A stretch of 62,040 nucleotides of DNA, the filler included, from Platydemus manokwari (taxonomy: Eukaryota): the NCBI GenBank assembly GCA_037951405.1. It is 4 parts of 4 records of this genome, joined end to end, with 100 filler letters (N's around TTAATTAATTAA, not from the genome) between each part and the next. Parts side by side here need not be neighbours in the genome. Positions count along the whole stretch, not along the records: positions 39,654 to 51,366 come from JBBMOY010503331.1; 3 more parts are not named here. One strand, given 5' to 3'. The position numbers were made by a program, and so were the translations under genes. The notes beneath the pieces were generated by a model, which was given only the letters and a program-made list of their open reading frames with translations, made no database searches and was not told where the DNA came from. Below, piece after piece: positions 40,491 through 49,668 of this stretch; position 1 is the stretch's first letter; every line of letters starts with the position of its first letter.

Positions 40491-42135
40491 TCATTTTCTG
40501 TCATCTGTGAGATCCACTGTGTCCTCGTCCTCCCCTCCTGTTAGGTCCATTAAGACTCTGGTTCCAGATGTTTCCTCCACTGATGTTGCTTTCAGATTTG
40601 GGTTCCTATACTCTAGAAACATAGTTTTCTTTGTTTTCTTGTCAGTGTAGTGGACACCTGTAATGTGCCATTCATAATCGCCTTCCTTAATTACTTTGGC
40701 TATTTTCTCCGGTACTTTTGTTTTCTTGGGATACGGCTTGTTTCGTTTTGGTATCTTTGGTATCGACCAGATGCTTCTTTTTTCAGAAGTAGATTGTAAT
40801 TAGTTGGATGTGCTTGGACCGTATTCTTCAGAGTCTATCTACTTCCATTGGATTAAATTTCTTGCTCTCCTTTTCTGGATGCTTCTTTTTGTGCATACTG
40901 GCTGGGAGAGTGGGTGCCATGATTGGGTCTAATTTTGTTAATACGACTCTGGGCAAAGTGGCCGCATTAATTGTCTGTAGCACTGGTGCTGATGGAACAT
41001 TTTTTTCTGGTTGACTAATAGCTTGATGAGTTTGTTCCTCATCTATGACTAAGTCGCCCATTAATTCGTCTTCTTCTATTTTCATTGGGTGTTCTGTTAC
41101 ATTCTGCACTTGATCTTGCCAGGTTGGTTCCAAATTTAAATAGAGTTGCCTTATGGTCTTTGCATTATTCTCCCTTAAAAGGTCCGAAAGCCTGTCTGGA
41201 ACGTAATTAGGCATAACGGCCTTGCATATCTTTGCCCATTTATATGCTTTGCTAGTGACAAAACCCTTGCTGGCTAAGTTTTGTGCTCTTGCCATATCAC
41301 GGATGCCAATTAGATGATCCGGGTTGATCCCGCATGCTTCTAGTGCATCCGTTATCTTGTATCCGATTATTACCTTTCCTTGAGTAATCTCTCTCAGCTT
41401 ATGTTGACAGAGGATTTCGTTCCACTGTCCTATGATGTTCTTTTCCGTGATGACGTCTGTACCGTCATTTTTCCAATGTCGGACTCGTCGCCGGGGTGCG
41501 ACTCTAGAGTTTATTATTATATTTCCCTGGTAGTTTAGTACCGTGATTGCTACTAGGGAATTTTCGGTTTCCTGCCGTGTCGTCATATTCGCGGTAGCGA
41601 CCATGCGCGCACTTAGGAATAGAATTTTGCTTCGGAGTTCCATTTCCGTCATAGGCATTTTGATAAAAGAATGATACAGGTTCACTTCTTTGAGTGAAAT
41701 TGGTACATTTGGTGTGTGCGTTGTAAAGGGTACATATGGTAGGTACTCATCTCTCTCTTTCGATCACGAGTGTGGTTGTTGGCATTAGAATTTCCACTTG
41801 AGCCTTGGGCAACCTCTGATTACACTCGGTAATTTCCAGGGTTTGGAAGGGGGACATCTCGATGAGCTGATCAAGTGTACCCATCCAGATTGTGATAGGT
41901 TCCCCAGCAGTGTGCAAGTAGCTATGTTGACGTCTCCATGCACCTACTATCCAGTATATTTGCTGGTAGAGCGTCTGAGAGTTGGATGCGGAGGCAAACG
42001 TTTGTGCTTTGTCTCAGAAGACCCTCAATTTGTAAGCTGTGAAATAGAAAATCCCGAGCGTGAATGGTTCTCGCATAATTGATCTATGTCTCCGGTAGTG
42101 TAGATAATATTCAAGAGCGCATCTGATTGTGATCT
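40491..42135 (-). pseudogene. Cargo gene B: unknown N-terminal domain + REX4/ISG20-like exonuclease fold + disordered tail ending in two SIM-like motifs (about 545 codons reconstructed)
   Basis: Track ORF 40828..41685 has ILFLSARMV, AITVLNYQGNIIINSRVAP, QGKVIIGYKITDAL, IGIRDMA and NNAKTIRQLY. It extends 5' across a frameshift in an (AG)n run (LRVF*DK..ASNS..HTAGEPITIW..TTLVIE) and 3' across frameshifts to ...RVLMDLTGGEDEDTVDLTDDRK*. Confidence 0.8.
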
Positions 42136-43791: not shown

Positions 43792-45542
43792 CTAAAGTTT
43801 CAATGTTATTTTTCTACTTGGCCCAATCCCCAACACTACTGGGGGACTGATGAAGCATATCCCCATGCTTTTCTTTTTTGAAGACTCATCGGGGCTGTCG
43901 AATCTTTTTCTTTTCCTTCCTTCCGTCTCGGCTGGCTGGCTATTTGTATTTATCCACAACTCTCCTGGGATAAATTCTTTTGCATTGGGATTCAAGTTAG
44001 AATTTTTGACGATGTCCTGATGGATATATTCTTCTGCATCTCGCCATAACTGCTCGAATTCCTCTTCTTTTTCCTTTACTCCCATCTGCTCTTCAATTAT
44101 AGATTCCTACCATAGCTGTTATAAAGATCTTTCCAAAGTAAGCTTATAATCCTCACAGTCTATATCATTATCTGGTTCCATTTCTTTTTCTGGTCGCTGG
44201 ATTTTGTTAAAATGATTAATTACTTGACCTTTTTCGACTCGTTCGTTGTCCTTTAAAATCTTAAATTCTCGGATATTATTTTTCCAGAGTTTATTTCTTT
44301 TGTTTTCAAGCAGCTGCTCTTCTGCTGACTTGAGTTTCCATGTCTGGTTTTTTGCTCTGATAACTGTATTTTCATTTAATAATTCTCTGTCCACCCATTC
44401 GAATATATTGGTGGCCTCGTTTATTATTTCTTGTCCTTCTTGAATTTTCCTTTTCCATCTGGTCTCATCGTTATCATCTCCTTTATCTTGCCAGTTTGAT
44501 TCAATTTTTTGATATATGTTCATCACTTCATCCAGCTCGTCGCTTCAATTTTCGTGTTGTGGCATTTTTCTTCCCACAATAGCCGCATGCATTTCTTTTA
44601 AGTTTTTACTTAGAAAATACCGGCTTTTTTTTCATCTCTTCTTCTACAGCGATTGAGCCTTTTAATTCTCTCACTCCGAGTACTTCTTCAAGGTAGATTG
44701 ATACCGCTTTCAATTTTCTCTTCATGTCGTAGCCAACTAGTATTTTCCCTTTTGTGATTTCTATTACTTTTCTGCTCGCGTGTCCTGCATCTATGGTCCC
44801 CCTGATTACTGTTTCTGCAGTGTGAGACTTGTTTTCCTGATAATGCTTGATCTCCGATCTTGGGGAGCATATTTGATTAAAAATATCCTCTCTCTTGAAA
44901 TTTTTCAGACATATCCACACTGGATATTCCTTGTTGTTGAAGTTAATGGCGTATTTTGCATCAAAATAGACGATCAACTCTATGATTTCTTGTTGGTTCA
45001 TCGGAGTGATGTTTCTCATGAATGACATTTCCTTTTTTGGTTGTAAGAATGGTAGATTCTGGAGGTTAAATATTTGTGGCTCCCTAAACTCCACTGGCTC
45101 TAACTGGTTGGGCTCCACCAGTTCGATCATTATGGTATATGGGATAGACTTTGATTTTATTCTTATTTGGGAATACTCATTCTGGAAATTCGGCCTGCCT
45201 TGCGGTTTTAAATAGATAGAAATTGATGATTGTGACTCCAGATCAATTTTTTCCCAGAATATTCTATGAGGATATCCGATTGTACATTGTGAATTTTTAT
45301 TCTTGTGGGGCGAATTGAAGTGCTGGCAATATTTCTTTGATTTTAAACCCTCCTTGTTCTTGCGAATGGAGAATAATTACAGATCTCTTTGACTGAGACG
45401 CCGTCTTTAGATTATTTGGGATGTGGGTTACATCTGAGAACACTCTTCTTTCTATGCCAAACGGTGTCTTTCTGACTGCCGCACGAATGGCTGTATAGAA
45501 TCTTCTAGGGTAGAATTGAATGATGCTAGTTGCAGGTTCCAT
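43792..45542 (-). pseudogene. Cargo gene A: same N-terminal domain + exonuclease fold + tail with PAM2 motif and basic NLS (about 580 codons reconstructed)
   Basis: Track ORFs 45297..45542, 44606..45130, 44119..44526 and 43792..44085 join through two frameshifts and three stops. Motifs: IVYFDAKYA, IFNQICSP, KGKILVGYD, VLGVREL, SKNLKEMHAAIVG, VMNIYQKIESNWQD, SNLNPNAKEFIPG, RKRKR. Confidence 0.8.
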
Positions 45543-45670: not shown

Positions 45671-46730
45671 TAATTTTAGCGCTCGATTTTGATTGGCTAA
45701 ATTTGTATGGACAATTTTCTCATTGGGTAGGATTTTTGGGGTAATTTTCTTATTGGTTAATTCATTTTCTTTTATTATTTCATCCGTTGGGAATTTTCTA
45801 AAAATATTAATTACATCAAACAAAATACCATGCTTGATTTTATATTTACAAAATTTAAATACTGTATGCATTCCTTGAAATAAAAGATTACTATTATGTT
45901 TACATAAATTGAAACCATTAAATACAATTTATACATCAAATTCTGGTATTTACATAAATTGTTTTCGTTTATTTCCCTCAAGTAACTATTAAATTCAAAA
46001 TCAAGGCTATTTATATACATATTTATTTTTTGTTCACATTGACACATATAAATTGATTAAAATTAAATAATTAGAAATTTTACAGCTAAACCTTTCTATA
46101 TACATATTGATTTTATCCTGCTATAAGTTGACTTCCTATACACGAGGGTTATCCCTATAATATTTTTTATACAGTTTATAACTTATGTACATCATCATTA
46201 TGGTGGTCAAGCTAGAGATTACTGCTCCAATTAGTATTACATTTAGGGTGATTTCATTTTGGGGTTTTTACTACTAATGGGGGTTATACTACTATTAATT
46301 AATGTTCTCATGATTTTTGTCGTTGTTTTACTAATGGGTTTTGTTGTTGTCTTTCTTACAAGGGGTTCTAACGTTATTTGTTCTCGATGAATTATGAACT
46401 TGGGATTGCTTTTTTCATAATACCAGAAATATATATTTACAGGGTTTTTGATGTCAACATTCCGGGTGATCATTCCTTCTGTGGAGTTTATATAATAACG
46501 ATGTTCATTTAAATGCACTTTTACTTTAAAACACTTTAGATCATCCCAAATGATTTTAATTTGATCTAGCATTTTTCGATGAATATTTTTCGGGGTAACT
46601 CGGGGATTTGTACTATCATTGTTGTAACATCATTTCCTTTTCTTATTTCTCGCTGATAGATTCTAGCTGCACATTCCAAAAAGGTAAAGAGCTTGACAAT
46701 GAAATGATATTGTTATTAACGATTAAACAT
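45650..46730 (-). pseudogene. Cargo gene D: candidate type-I membrane protein (possibly env-like), decayed
   Basis: A hydrophobic N-terminal stretch (HFIVKLFTFLECAA), an ectodomain-like ORF 46243..46572 with a Thr/Ser-rich stalk (KTTTKPISKTTTK), then a hydrophobic segment LYLMVSIYVNIIVIFYF and a basic tail, spread over several frames. Confidence 0.35.
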
Positions 46731-46749
46731 GCAAACTTCTGAGGTATCT

Positions 46750-47370
46750 TGCCTTAGTCCAGAAATTCATTCAACTTTGGAGAATCTCTTAGGATCATAT
46801 ATCTTAATTTTTATTTCATTTGATCGTGAATAATTTTGGTTCTCTTATCTCCTTATTTGTTTACGGTTTGTTGCCTTCTGGTAATATTGATTGAGGTTTT
46901 ACAATTTCCTTTCTGGGTACTTGGTGTTTTTTGTATTTGCTTAATATTATTTTTGACTATTTGTTAGGTTTTTGGTTTGATTTCTTCTTTTTCCTCGTCT
47001 ATTGTTTTTTCCTTTACTTTCTATCATCCGAATAATATGTGTTTGTTACACATGCGAGGTGATTATTTTATTCTAGCTCTATTATTTTCTCAGGTTTTAT
47101 GAATTTTCCTCACATGATAAGATGCTAGAGTCTTGATGTTATATATTCCATTACTTCCCCTGTCACTCGCCTCCGTAAATATTAGCGTGATTGATAATTC
47201 TTTCAAGCCACTTAAATATTCTGAAGATTTAACTAATTGACATTTAAGTTCAAAATACCAAATCGCAATTTTTAAAAATTTGATAATATAAGCTTGATAT
47301 TCAAACAAGTCAGAAGGATTTAGAATCTGTTTACTTACCTGGACTCCAACAAATAAAGTTTGTTGCTGCT
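46750..47370 (-). pseudogene. Cargo gene E: 5'-truncated third paralog of the exonuclease-fold family
   Basis: QTLFVGVQ..DLFEYQAYIIKFLK..SEYLSGLKELS..NIKTLASYHVRKIHKT*EN aligns with LGVREL/IGIRDM and NAKTIRQLYLNLEPTWQD, with TGA at the conserved Trp. Confidence 0.55.
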
Positions 47371-47880
47371 ATGTATCACTGCTATATAAAATATAAATAT
47401 TGCAAATATTATATACGCTGGTATTTATTGTAGAAATACAGAGTTAAAACAAAGTAAAACAATACTGTTTATTGAATTAAAACAAATAATTTAAAAGACA
47501 AAATTAATTTATACAGTGTAGCCTAGTGTGTACGCACTTTGGTACCATAAAATATGGCAATACCGTTAACGTACTTTATATAATAATTATAATTGATTAT
47601 AATATAAAAATTATTTTTAATTAATTATCAGATTGAACTACGATCATCCATCATATGCGTAGCTCAATCTGTCATTCATTATGAATTGGATTTTCATTCT
47701 CCAACAGAATTTATCCTGACAGCAATGATAGGTCGAGATTTATTGCTTGTCAGCGCTTTTAAACCCCGTTGGGTTCTGCGTGAATTTTAAGCAACAATAT
47801 AGTAACCTTGGGTTTTGGATCACTTGATGAATTGGTCTCAAAATTATTATATGCACAGATAGTTATTTTCTAGATTTCTT

Positions 47881-48068
47881 TTAGTCCTATCTGTCTCTGG
47901 TTCAGGCACTGATGAGACACATGAAAGGCCGAAATATAAAACTATCTGCATCACAAAACCACCATTATCGTCTTCGCAGCCATCGTTCATAAAGTTTCCG
48001 CCAGATCGTCCTATATATCTCTGAACCGGGATACTGATGAGACCTATGGAGGGCCGAAATAGGACTAA
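47881..48068 (+). ncRNA. Tandem (double) hammerhead ribozyme
   Basis: Two CUGAUGA boxes (47909-47915, 48034-48040), each followed by a 15-nt G...C-closed stem II and GAAA (47931-47934, 48056-48059). NUH sites are AUC at 47889-47891 and AUA at 48013-48017. Stem III pairs TTAGTCCTA with TAGGACTAA, and stem I pairings are available. Confidence 0.85.
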
Positions 48069-49152
48069 TTTTTCAAAAAAGGTAGTTTATTCATTTAGTT
48101 ATTTATTTGTTTATTGTATCTTGACCGCTTAACACAAACAATAACAATTGAAACAAAACAATAAAATGAATATGACTGATTTAAACATGAATTTAGACCA
48201 TGGGCAGATAAATAACAAAACTCCATTATGGACACAAAATAACCTCAATGTAACAATAAAGCGCTTGCTGCCTGGGTGACTGGACAAGCATTTCTACAAA
48301 AAGGAAAGTGGGGGACCAAAAGGGAATTCTTAACAAATTTTAAAAGACCGCGAGGCTAAAAGTAGCCATGAATCTGTAATTAATTACAATGATAATAAGA
48401 AATTAACTCATCTTGGCTTGAAATACTTTCAGAATAATTGTAATAATGAATATCGAAACCGAATAAAATGATCATCAATAATAATTGATTTCAATCAAAA
48501 ATTTTAATAAATTTCTTGAACTAATATTGAATGCCAAATATTGTATTTCATAGCTGCATCGATTACCAAGAGAAATACGATATTGATTTCAATTTATCTG
48601 AGAATTAAATCGATTTTATTAAACTAAATATCTCCGGCAGGTCAATTTACAGCGAATATTTTGCAAGTTTTATAGAATCAAGTTAACAATAATCAATTTT
48701 AAAAGGATTAATGTTCATGGTTCACATGTTAAGCAGGAAGAATTTATAAACAATCACCGACAAGAAATTATTAGAAAACACCAACATAAAATCACAAATA
48801 TTTGAATTGGAATAAAATACATATTTTATTGACTTTTATGTAACATAATCAGAACCAAGAGAACATTGATACCATGCACAATGAGAATGAAAACCTAAAC
48901 ACAACATATACTCTGAAACTAGATTATCATTATCATTATTATTATTTTCATTTAGTTAATAATATTTTATATTTGTCTTTATTGAATTTTAAAATACAGA
49001 TAACCGATAATCAATAAAAAATAGAATAACGATAATAAATATTACAATTACAAATGACATAAATATTTAGTCAAGCTAATATACATTTCGATGTTACCAT
49101 TGTTAATTGCATTCATTTTAAATTCTTGATCGAGTCTGAACACGGAAATTCA

Positions 49153-49668
49153 TTATTTCAATTCTGACAATGCATCAGCACATTCTTCTTGTTTTAATGA
49201 AAGTCTCTTGATAATCTTCGTTAAACTAACTTCGACTTTCGCTGCAGGATTGTTTCGACATTTTTCATTGGATAACTTCCTTATTTTCGCTAAGTACGGT
49301 TTCGAATCACTAATTCTTTTTTCCACAGACTCACGAACTAATGGTGGTAACGTACTAAATTTTAATGAAGACTTGGTTTTCTTCGACGCAATGCTCGGAT
49401 TTCTATGTTTATTAATCAATAATCGTCTAGCCAATTGAATACTGTTAGTCACTTTGTAATCGGTAAATGATCCATCTACTCGTCGAAAATCATCAACACG
49501 TTCCATTTCAGATTCTTGTTTATTGATCAAATTGTAATCTCGAATCTTTGCTGTAATTCGATTGAAATACTTTTCTATTTCCAATTGTTCAAGATTAACA
49601 TATTCTCGAAAGAGTTCGCGATTTCTTTTTGATTTCGATTGTTGTTCTTCTATTAAAATCGATTTCAT
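49153..49668 (-). CDS. Hypothetical basic, coiled-coil-rich protein (about 171 aa), single exon
   Basis: Long uninterrupted ORF with protein-like composition in very AT-rich DNA. An in-frame TAG lies just upstream of the ATG. No recognised domain. Confidence 0.5.
   Translation of the reverse strand: MKSILIEEQQSKSKRNRELFREYVNLEQLEIEKYFNRITAKIRDYNLINKQESEMERVDDFRRVDGSFTDYKVTNSIQLARRLLINKHRNPSIASKKTKSSLKFSTLPPLVRESVEKRISDSKPYLAKIRKLSNEKCRNNPAAKVEVSLTKIIKRLSLKQEECADALSELK

What the first reader, a model, noticed from the sequence alone, without database searches (positions are those of the whole stretch)
47881..48068. Double hammerhead ribozyme whose two cores can share a single helix I
Seen: two complete cores 125 nt apart. 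Each can close a local type-III stem I (TGTCT/AGGCA; TATCTC/GGGATA), but the two loops are complementary (CTGGTTCA vs TGAACCGG). So 47892-47908 can instead pair with 48018-48033 as one ~16-bp helix flanked by both cores. The outer stem III would be TTAGTCCTA/TAGGACTAA (cut after AUC, 47891) and the inner stem III TATAAAACTATCTG/CAGATCGTCCTATA (cut after AUA, 48017). Both stems II carry the same A-C mismatch at the second pair. Established: animal hammerheads in Penelope-like elements and retrozymes are mostly type I and dimerise through stem III. Inference: a helix-I-shared or switchable pair is unusual and would release a ~125-nt RNA that could circularise.
Basis: partly seen in the sequence, partly recalled or inferred. 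Interest (0 to 1): 0.8.

Follow-up and report, generated by a model that had tools for sequence, protein, structure and literature searches.

The report
Tandem hammerhead ribozymes in a repeat
Two real type III hammerhead ribozyme motifs sit 125 bases apart inside a high-copy non-coding repeat; the downstream one is intact and the upstream one is decayed, and their ability to share one long helix I looks like a side effect of being two copies of the same hairpin rather than a designed switch.

Summary
There are two hammerhead cores on the + strand, at 47909-47934 and 48034-48059. The stem I loops are complementary, a perfect 10-bp outer stem III exists, and both stems II share an A-C mismatch.

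A covariance model built only from 18 unrelated metagenomic type III hammerheads scores HH2 (48006-48067) at 62.4 bits, E about 1e-19. HH2 matches as a complete, self-contained ribozyme that cuts after A48015. HH1 (47882-47942) scores 25.3 bits and is degenerate.

Contigs of the only public run that holds this DNA show that about 47410-48120 is a high-copy repeat, roughly 40 to 550 times single-copy depth. The consensus read from other copies has a canonical hammerhead of the same class.

The shared helix I is thermodynamically possible (-17.9 kcal/mol), but it is expected for two homologous hairpins. The family consensus hairpin paired with itself gives about -20 to -21. In simulation, 7-22% of diverged copy pairs reach -17.9. 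The swapped stems III are explained because all four flanks are homologous.

Verdict: this is a tandemly duplicated hammerhead unit in a retrozyme-like repeat. It is a new member of a known kind, and the helix-I-sharing design is unsupported. No RNA data were available.

The parts
47410..48120 (+). Extent (approximate) of the high-copy, non-coding, AT-rich repeat that carries both hammerheads
   Evidence: Contig depth of run X1 rises from about 13-34 to 520-7200 between about 47410 and 48116 and falls back to 14 by 48218. Unique zero-difference contigs end at 47504 and start at 48047. No ORF of 70 aa or more, no tRNA, GC 0.32.
47851..47864 (+). Distal 5' strand of HH1's own stem III; pairs with 47940-47951
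   Evidence: CAGATAGTT (47856-47864) is the exact complement of AACTATCTG (47940-47948). The MFE of 47850-47952 forms this helix, extended by AUGCA/UGCAU.
47860..47881 (+). 22-nt insertion in the 5' flank of site 1 relative to the flank of site 2
   Evidence: Pairwise alignment A2 of the two hammerhead units.
47881..47891 (+). Site 1: stem III 5' strand TTAGTCCTAT and C17; cleavage would fall after C47891
   Evidence: Perfect 10-bp complement of 48059-48068. Only the last three bases pair with HH1's own 3' flank.
47882..47942 (+). HH1: degenerate type III hammerhead. Stem I hairpin 47892-47908, CUGAUGA 47909-47915, stem II and loop 2 47916-47930, GAAA 47931-47934.
   Evidence: Class model R1 gives 25.3 bits, E 7.6e-7, with non-standard pairs in all three helices, one base missing from stem I, loop 1 UGGUUC and loop 2 AUGAA. 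Rfam Hammerhead_3 gives 13.1 bits.
47892..48015 (+). 124-nt segment between the two homologous cleavage sites
   Evidence: Length and sequence. Folded as a circle it is no more stable than shuffles (z +0.96). This part has lower contig depth (about 520) than the flanks.
48006..48067 (+). HH2: complete type III hammerhead. Stem III GTCCTAT 48008-48014 with 48059-48065, cleavage after A48015, stem I hairpin 48016-48033 with loop UGAACC, CUGAUGA 48034-48040, stem II and loop AUGGA 48041-48055, GAAA 48056-48059.
   Evidence: R1 gives 62.4 bits, E 1.5e-19, full length, with the single non-standard pair A48042 x C48054. The MFE of 48002-48070 alone shows the hammerhead's three helices, with stem II partly formed (3 pairs), at -14.1 kcal/mol.
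48059..48068 (+). Stem III 3' strand ATAGGACTAA, able to pair with either site 2 (7 bp) or site 1 (10 bp)
   Evidence: I16. Outer stem III has probability above 0.94 in the ensemble of 47875-48075 but 0.007 in 47850-48100.

Best explanation
This is one copy of a dispersed, non-coding, high-copy repeat of an AT-rich, apparently eukaryotic genome. The repeat carries type III hammerhead ribozymes of a widespread class. That class has stem I closed by a C-G pair, loop 1 U-R-N-N-C-C, stem II GGCCN/NGGCC and loop 2 AUGGA.

In this copy the hammerhead unit is present twice in tandem, with cores 125 nt and cleavage sites 124 nt apart.

Inferred mechanism: when the + strand is transcribed, the downstream ribozyme HH2 folds locally. 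It forms a stem III of 7 bp, a stem I hairpin of 6 bp and a stem II of 5 pairs with one A-C. Its loop 1 and loop 2 carry the class's invariant motifs and presumably dock on each other, as tertiary-stabilised type III hammerheads do (this contact was not tested). It cuts after A48015.

The upstream ribozyme HH1 is a mutationally decayed copy and is probably weak or dead.

Because the two units are homologous, each 5' flank is complementary to each 3' flank. Each stem I strand is also complementary to the partner strand of the other unit, and the quasi-palindromic loop lets that cross helix run through. The shared helix I and the outer and inner stems III are therefore by-products of duplication, not a selected double-ribozyme architecture.

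If site 1 (after C47891) is cut at all in this copy, the likeliest catalyst is core 2. It would act through the 10-bp outer stem III and the long cross helix I, as a slow hammerhead of the minimal type. A 124-nt RNA with 5'-OH and 2',3'-cyclic phosphate ends would then be released.

Shown: the motifs, class membership, repeat status, pairing possibilities and energies. Inferred: transcription, cleavage, decay of HH1, and any release or circularisation.
For: Two cores only, same strand.

A model built without the window's sequences finds HH2 at 62.4 bits (E 1.5e-19) and HH1 at 25.3 bits, with the next hit at 7.7 bits.

The class's local stem I covaries: 5 of 6 pairs change on both sides, 96% of cells are paired, and 0 of 500 shuffles reach the score.

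HH2 stem I differs from the family consensus by a G-C to A-U double change in the local hairpin.

Contigs of run X1 show 1614 records laid on 3 kb and depth up to 7200 against about 13 for single copy. The loose-end consensus after 47899 continues as a canonical hammerhead with a G at stem II position 10.2, where both window copies have A.

Alignment of the two units shows homology of flanks, stem I and core, with a 22-nt insertion.

In the null simulation, the consensus hairpin duplex is -20.4 to -21.0 kcal/mol and 7-22% of diverged pairs are at or below -17.9.

HH2 alone folds into the hammerhead secondary structure as its MFE.
Against: Nearest-neighbour energies favour the shared helix I over the local hairpins in the two-ribozyme RNA, at -23.0 against -16.4 to -18.9 kcal/mol. 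Its ensemble probability is 0.27 against 0.014 or less in one context.

Full loop-to-loop complementarity is uncommon among pooled class and family loops, at 2-3 of 210 pairs, so chance is roughly a few per cent rather than trivial.

The outer stem III is perfect over 10 bp.

Both ribozymes share the same G-to-A change in stem II, which could mark a subfamily with its own rules.

I could not retrieve other genomic copies as sequences, so conservation of the cross pairing within two-hammerhead copies was not tested. No RNA run holds the locus.
Confidence: 0.7

Rival explanations
1. One reading: a functional double hammerhead in which one roughly 15-bp helix I is flanked by both cores. The outer ribozyme is site 1 plus core 2 and the inner ribozyme is a site after A48017 plus core 1. 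The pair either acts as a switch or releases a roughly 125-nt RNA.
For: All pairings exist. The duplex is -17.9 kcal/mol against -5.7 for the two hairpins together, and the whole model is 4-6 kcal/mol better than the local models. Positions 1.1-2.1 and 15.1-16.1 pair in both swapped ribozymes. The outer stem III dominates the ensemble of 47875-48075.
Against: Core 1's stem II is broken at three of five pairs, and position 1.2-2.2 of the inner ribozyme is C-C. The inner cleavage register (48017) is not the homologous one. A long continuous helix I removes the loop 1 to loop 2 contact whose motifs are invariant in the class. The cross helix is expected from homology. The inner stem III has zero ensemble probability, and the shared helix drops to 0.036 with 25 nt more flank. 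In other copies 48002 is mostly G, not C, which would break the terminal inner stem III pair unless 47948 covaries. This is one copy among hundreds.
Confidence: 0.07
2. A working retrozyme-like dimer: both hammerheads act independently in the local type III fold. HH1 would use its distal stem III, 47851-47864 with 47940-47951. Together they would release a 124-nt RNA that host ligases circularise as the transposition or replication intermediate of the repeat family.
For: Two direct hammerheads flank a non-coding unit inside a high-copy repeat. Other copies also carry sequence homologous to the inner unit, as shown by the loose-end consensus before 48003. HH1 has a 9-12-bp distal helix of its own. 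Retrozymes with hammerheads are known in plants and animals (PMC4918200, PMC7229834).
Against: HH1 fails the usual stem criteria (criteria in PMC3088659). 124 nt is far below described retrozyme circles, which are 170-400 nt or 600-1000 nt. The unit as a circle is not structured (z +0.96). Most of the repeat lies outside the two cleavage sites. No RNA evidence exists.
Confidence: 0.2
3. Chance resemblance: the motifs are not hammerheads at all.
For: Rfam gives no hit at gathering score. The fold energy of the 201-nt region is ordinary (z -0.39).
Against: E is 1.5e-19 and 7.6e-7 with an independent class model. The cores are intact, the family consensus is canonical, and Rfam's model also misses clear class members.
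Confidence: 0.01

Closest known systems
Type III hammerhead ribozymes with loop 1 U-R-N-N-C-C and loop 2 AUGGA, as found here in metagenome contigs L001-L020, including circular viroid-like contigs
   Same: The catalytic core is identical. Stem II and loop 2 are nearly the same: the repeat's consensus differs at about one base from L004, L006, L012, L017 and L020. The closing C-G of stem I and the loop 1 motif are shared. HH2's loop UGAACC is identical to that of L015.
   Different: Here the ribozyme is part of an AT-rich high-copy genomic repeat rather than a GC-rich phage-like intergenic site or a 1.5-1.6-kb circular replicon. Both window copies carry A instead of the invariant G at position 10.2.
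[quoted passage not shown]
   Same: Non-coding, multi-copy genomic repeat with two hammerheads in direct orientation around a short unit. Low GC, like the animal elements. Type III ribozyme, like the plant elements.
   Different: The unit between sites is only 124 nt. No LTR, PBS or PPT was recognised. About 470 nt of the repeat lies upstream of the first site. One ribozyme is decayed. Circular RNA has not been shown.
Double hammerheads of ASBVd, newt satellite 2, satRPV and Penelope-like elements (PMC6466107, PMC6765202)
   Same: Two adjacent ribozyme units could exchange strands so that one long helix is flanked by both cores.
   Different: All described cases merge helix III, because helix III is too short to be stable. 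Here helix III is long (7-10 bp), the merged helix would be helix I, and the merge is not needed for HH2.
Discontinuous type III hammerhead of mammalian Clec2 3' UTRs (described in PMC6155905)
   Same: The outer ribozyme (site 1 plus core 2) would be a type III hammerhead whose helix I is interrupted by a large insert, here about 115 nt.
   Different: In Clec2 the split arrangement is the conserved form. Here it is an alternative to a complete local ribozyme in one copy of a repeat.

Membership tests
Hammerhead ribozyme, type III | Conserved core C3 U4 G5 A6 N7 G8 A9, G12 A13 A14, A15.1-U16.1, H17 (criteria of PMC3088659) | tested here: met
   Both cores are intact. H17 is C47891 for HH1 and A48015 for HH2.
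Hammerhead ribozyme, type III | No mispair next to the core (1.1-2.1, 10.1-11.1, 15.1-16.1) | tested here: met
   U-A, G-C and A-U in both units in the local fold.
Hammerhead ribozyme, type III | Three helices without multiple mispairs in short stems; helices I and II closed by loops, helix III open | tested here: inconclusive
   HH2 meets this, with one A-C in stem II. HH1 does not: three of five stem II pairs are broken, stem I has lost one base, and the contiguous stem III is only 3 bp.
Hammerhead ribozyme, type III | Score at or above the Rfam RF00008 gathering threshold | tested here: not met
   13.1 bits against 48.5 for HH1, and no hit for HH2. The same model also stays below gathering on the class members L003, L005, L014 and L018, so this failure says little.
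Hammerhead ribozyme, type III | Match to an independent covariance model of the loop 1 / loop 2 class | tested here: met
   HH2 scores 62.4 bits (E 1.5e-19) and HH1 25.3 bits (E 7.6e-7). The core, stem II and loop 2 part is shared by construction of the search pattern. Stem I, loop 1 and stem III are independent.
Hammerhead ribozyme, type III | Self-cleavage at the predicted site | not testable with these tools
   No RNA run holds the locus; only DNA contigs were available.
Double hammerhead (merged-helix dimer) | Unstable short helix III with a palindromic loop, so that activity needs two units merged through helix III | tested here: not met
   HH2's helix III is 7 bp, or 10 bp with site 1. 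The only merged helix available is helix I.
Double hammerhead (merged-helix dimer) | Cross pairing conserved among copies | not testable with these tools
   Other genomic copies could be seen only as summary tables. The null model shows the cross pairing is expected from homology.
Retrozyme | Non-coding multi-copy element with hammerheads in direct repeat flanking the mobilised unit | tested here: met
Retrozyme | LTRs with PBS and PPT (plant type), or tandem arrays of whole units each with a hammerhead (animal type) | tested here: inconclusive
   No tandem repeat beyond the two ribozyme units, and no LTR-like long direct repeat. Some other copies show a 'goes back 55' joint and joints that skip the inner unit, but the short contigs leave the architecture unclear.
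Retrozyme | Expressed as linear and circular monomer RNA | not testable with these tools
   No RNA holder.

The most novel reading that the evidence does not exclude
In this repeat family, adjacent type III hammerheads exchange stem I strands through their quasi-palindromic loops. The consensus hairpin duplex is already -20 kcal/mol. The dimer would then switch between two local ribozymes and a helix-I-merged double hammerhead. This would gate cleavage of the upstream site and release of a 124-nt RNA, making it the first double hammerhead built on helix I and the smallest hammerhead-bounded genomic unit.
Probability: 0.07. Interest if true: 0.65.

Novelty: new member of a known kind. Interest (0 to 1): 0.3.

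Why it matters
Hammerheads tied to eukaryotic repeats are overwhelmingly type I (PMC3088659, PMC7229834), and type III ones are known mainly from plant retrozymes. A type III family present at hundreds of copies in an AT-rich genome therefore adds a data point on how these ribozymes move between replicons and genomes. Its loops match those of viroid-like circular RNAs and phage-like contigs from metagenomes.

The case is also a caution. Strand-swapped alternative folds of tandem ribozymes arise automatically from homology. They need covariation or cleavage data before they are read as design.

Tried and rejected
Rfam. The whole piece and the 271-nt region gave only a sub-threshold Hammerhead_3 hit.

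Collection scans with the core pattern. Viral contigs gave 0 hits. Prokaryote genomes gave 0 hits with two patterns. Metagenomes gave 20 loci of the same ribozyme class but none of the same repeat, so no orthologous or paralogous copies were obtained as sequences.

Organism identification failed. The run and organism are coded. The 285-aa ORF has no word-search relatives and is not on record as a called gene. The Atlas only suggests an RNase T-like exonuclease of eukaryotes. Alternative genetic codes gave nothing decisive.

A viroid-like rod for the 124-nt unit is rejected: as a circle, z is +0.96.

A tRNA-derived SINE origin, promoters and terminators are rejected.

Terminal inverted repeats or LTRs of the repeat were not seen convincingly.

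I first read the joints 47898 to 48033 as proof of single-hammerhead copies. I withdrew that, because the shorter aligned side is only about 32 nt and the two cores are 86% alike, so those contigs could equally be upstream units laid on core 2.

A literature search for the core sequence string returned only engineered ribozymes.

Full report
**1. What is in the sequence**

The pattern CTGATGA, 6-30 bases, GAAA occurs exactly twice in the window. Both matches are on the + strand, at 47909-47934 and 48034-48059, 125 nt apart (0.28 expected by chance). The two cores and their first flanking bases form a 29-nt direct repeat of 86% identity (D14).

- The local stem I hairpins are 47892-47908 and 48016-48033.
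- The cross helix between 47892-47908 and 48018-48033 has 15 pairs (4 of them G-U), one C-C mismatch and one bulged C.
- The outer stem III, 47881-47890 with 48059-48068, has 10 perfect pairs.
- The inner stem III has 12 pairs out of 15 positions.
- Both stems II have an A-C mismatch at 10.2-11.2.

Small corrections are given in the observation check. The important one concerns the cleavage site. The homologous site of the second ribozyme is after A48015.

**2. Are they hammerheads?**

Rfam does not say so. Hammerhead_3 gives 13.1 bits on the first core against a gathering score of 48.5, and nothing on the second.

A scan of metagenome contigs with a loose core pattern returned 20 loci, containing 18 distinct type III hammerheads. 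In alignment A1 they share several features that the pattern did not impose:
- a 6-bp stem I closed by an invariant C-G pair;
- a loop 1 of the form U-R-N(1-4)-C-C;
- a G at 10.2.

Stem I and stem III covary strongly. Nine of eleven pairs change on both sides, 97% of cells are paired, and no shuffle reaches the score.

I built a covariance model from these 18 sequences alone. On the 11.7-kb piece it finds 48006-48067 at 62.4 bits (E 1.5e-19) as a full-length match in the local fold, with one non-standard pair. It finds 47882-47942 at 25.3 bits (E 7.6e-7) with non-standard pairs in all helices. The next hit is at 7.7 bits.

HH2 is therefore a complete type III hammerhead that needs nothing from HH1. 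Its 69-nt region folds into the three hammerhead helices as the MFE, with stem II partly formed. HH1 has lost the closing G of stem I. Its loop 1 is UGGUUC rather than ending in CC, its loop 2 is AUGAA rather than AUGGA, and three of five stem II pairs are broken. Only 3 contiguous stem III pairs remain.

The Rfam model also stays below gathering on four clear members of the class, so its silence is not informative.

**3. Context**

The only public run that holds this DNA is a set of DNA contigs of a coded organism. No RNA run holds it.

I laid those contigs on 46400-49400 at 80% likeness. About 47410-48120 proves to be a high-copy repeat. Summed depth there is 520-7200, against about 13 for the flanking single-copy sequence, and 1614 contigs were laid.

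The consensus of the parts of other copies that leave the alignment at 47899-47901 continues as a canonical hammerhead. Stem I is TGTCTC/GAGGCA, loop 1 is TGATCC or TGGTCC, and stem II has G at 10.2. The window's A-C mismatch is therefore a departure from the family consensus.

Relative to that consensus, HH2's stem I (TATCTC/GGGATA) has a G-C to A-U double change in the local hairpin.

Other copies also carry sequence homologous to the inner unit, shown by the loose-end consensus before 48003. That part has lower depth, about 520. Contigs are too short to tell how many copies have one, two or more ribozyme units.

The repeat is non-coding, has no tRNA-like part, and shows no convincing terminal repeats.

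The piece is 31.5% GC. It carries ORFs that look eukaryotic, namely a PAM2 motif and RNase T-like exonuclease features. I could not identify the organism.

**4. Why the swapped pairings exist**

Alignment of the two units shows they are homologous from the 5' flank through stem I and the core to the first bases after GAAA. The flank of site 1 equals the flank of site 2 plus a 22-nt insertion.

Upstream of that insertion, 47856-47864 is the exact complement of 47940-47948. HH1 thus has its own distal stem III. The two 3' flanks look like differently decayed versions of one complement of the 5' flank. HH2 keeps the part next to the core, and HH1 keeps the distal part.

Every 5' flank therefore pairs to some extent with every 3' flank. 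This produces the outer and inner stems III without any design.

The same holds for helix I. The 5' strand of one copy of a hairpin is complementary to the 3' strand of another copy. The class loop, G-N-N-C-C after the U, is also quasi-palindromic.

I tested this with a null model. The family's consensus hairpin paired with itself or with its variant gives -20.4 to -21.0 kcal/mol. After independent divergence of 10-20% per copy, 22-7% of pairs still reach the observed -17.9.

Counting loops only, 2-3 of 210 pairs of class and family loops are fully complementary. Three of 21 loops would complement HH1's loop. The loop match is thus somewhat lucky, at a few per cent, but not remarkable for one copy among hundreds that was picked out because it looked interesting.

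**5. Thermodynamics**

Nearest-neighbour energies do favour the shared helix in the two-unit RNA.

In the ensemble of 47875-48075 the shared helix has probability 0.27 and the local stems 0.014 or less. With 25 more bases on each side the shared helix falls to 0.036 and the outer stem III to 0.007. The inner stem III is never populated.

None of the hammerhead folds is the MFE of the region, which is -42.4 kcal/mol with z -0.39.

These calculations ignore the loop 1 to loop 2 tertiary contact and co-transcriptional folding. Both favour local hairpins. A continuous helix I would abolish that contact.

**6. Most likely mechanism**

HH2 cleaves after A48015 in the local type III fold (inferred from class membership). 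HH1 is a decayed duplicate.

If site 1 is cut in this copy, core 2 acting through the outer stem III and the cross helix is the more plausible catalyst. This resembles a discontinuous or minimal hammerhead, and cleavage would be slow. It would be an accident of this copy.

Release of a 124-nt RNA and its circularisation are possible but unsupported. As a circle the unit is not structured (z +0.96).

**7. Comparison with known systems**

All described double hammerheads merge helix III, because that helix is too short to be stable (PMC6466107, PMC6765202). Here helix III is long.

Retrozymes are the nearest kind of element (PMC4918200, PMC7229834). However, the unit here is much shorter than any described retrozyme unit, most of the repeat lies outside the cleavage sites, and no RNA evidence exists.

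Repeat-associated eukaryotic hammerheads are mostly type I (PMC3088659). A type III family of this abundance is therefore a modestly interesting new member.

**8. Verdict**

The special architecture is not supported.

I rate this a new member of a known kind, with interest 0.3.

Noticed in passing
L003 (1757 nt), L005 (1749 nt), L014 (1596 nt): These three metagenome contigs have identical 123-nt ends, so they are probably circular molecules of about 1.47-1.63 kb. L003 and L005 carry the type III hammerhead of this class on one strand and a Hairpin-meta1 ribozyme (56-58 bits, above gathering) on the other. L014 carries class hammerheads on both strands (73.2 and 41.5 bits). They look like viroid-like circular replicons.
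   Followed up: partly
L003, L005, L014, L018 and window 48006-48067: Rfam Hammerhead_3 does not reach its gathering score on any of these clear type III hammerheads, so this loop class seems under-represented in the Rfam model.
   Followed up: partly
metagenome loci L001, L002, L007, L008, L010, L011, L013, L016, L019: GC-rich contigs in which the hammerhead sits just after a GC-rich terminator-like hairpin and just before an AGGAG-like ribosome-binding site, a phage-like intergenic context. Yet the same core pattern has no exact match in 185,579 prokaryote species genomes or in the viral contig collection.
   Followed up: no
window 46400-46700: A second high-copy repeat, with contig depth 620-1640 against about 13 for single copy. 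It partly overlaps the minus-strand ORF 46243-46572. No hammerhead motif was found there.
   Followed up: no
window 40828-41685 (-) and 44606-45130 (-): Two ORFs with similar C-terminal stretches, plus a 34-nt direct repeat 41109-41142 / 44481-44514. The first looks like an RNase T-type exonuclease by protein language-model features (Atlas), but has no Pfam hit and no word-search relatives. They are possibly lineage-specific paralogues.
   Followed up: partly
window 43792-44085 (-): ORF with a PAM2 (PABP-binding) motif (E 5.8e-6). It probably forms one gene with the neighbouring minus-strand ORFs 44119-44526 and 44606-45130, which are separated by short gaps that look like small introns.
   Followed up: no
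window 48011-48065, in other genomic copies: Two contigs show a joint that goes back from 48065 to 48011 with one extra base. Some copies of the repeat therefore seem to carry complete hammerheads head to tail at about 55-nt spacing.
   Followed up: no
window 47603-47858: Joints skipping 190 nt (47603 to 47794) and 165 nt (47692 to 47858) in other copies indicate shorter variants of the repeat's left arm.
   Followed up: no
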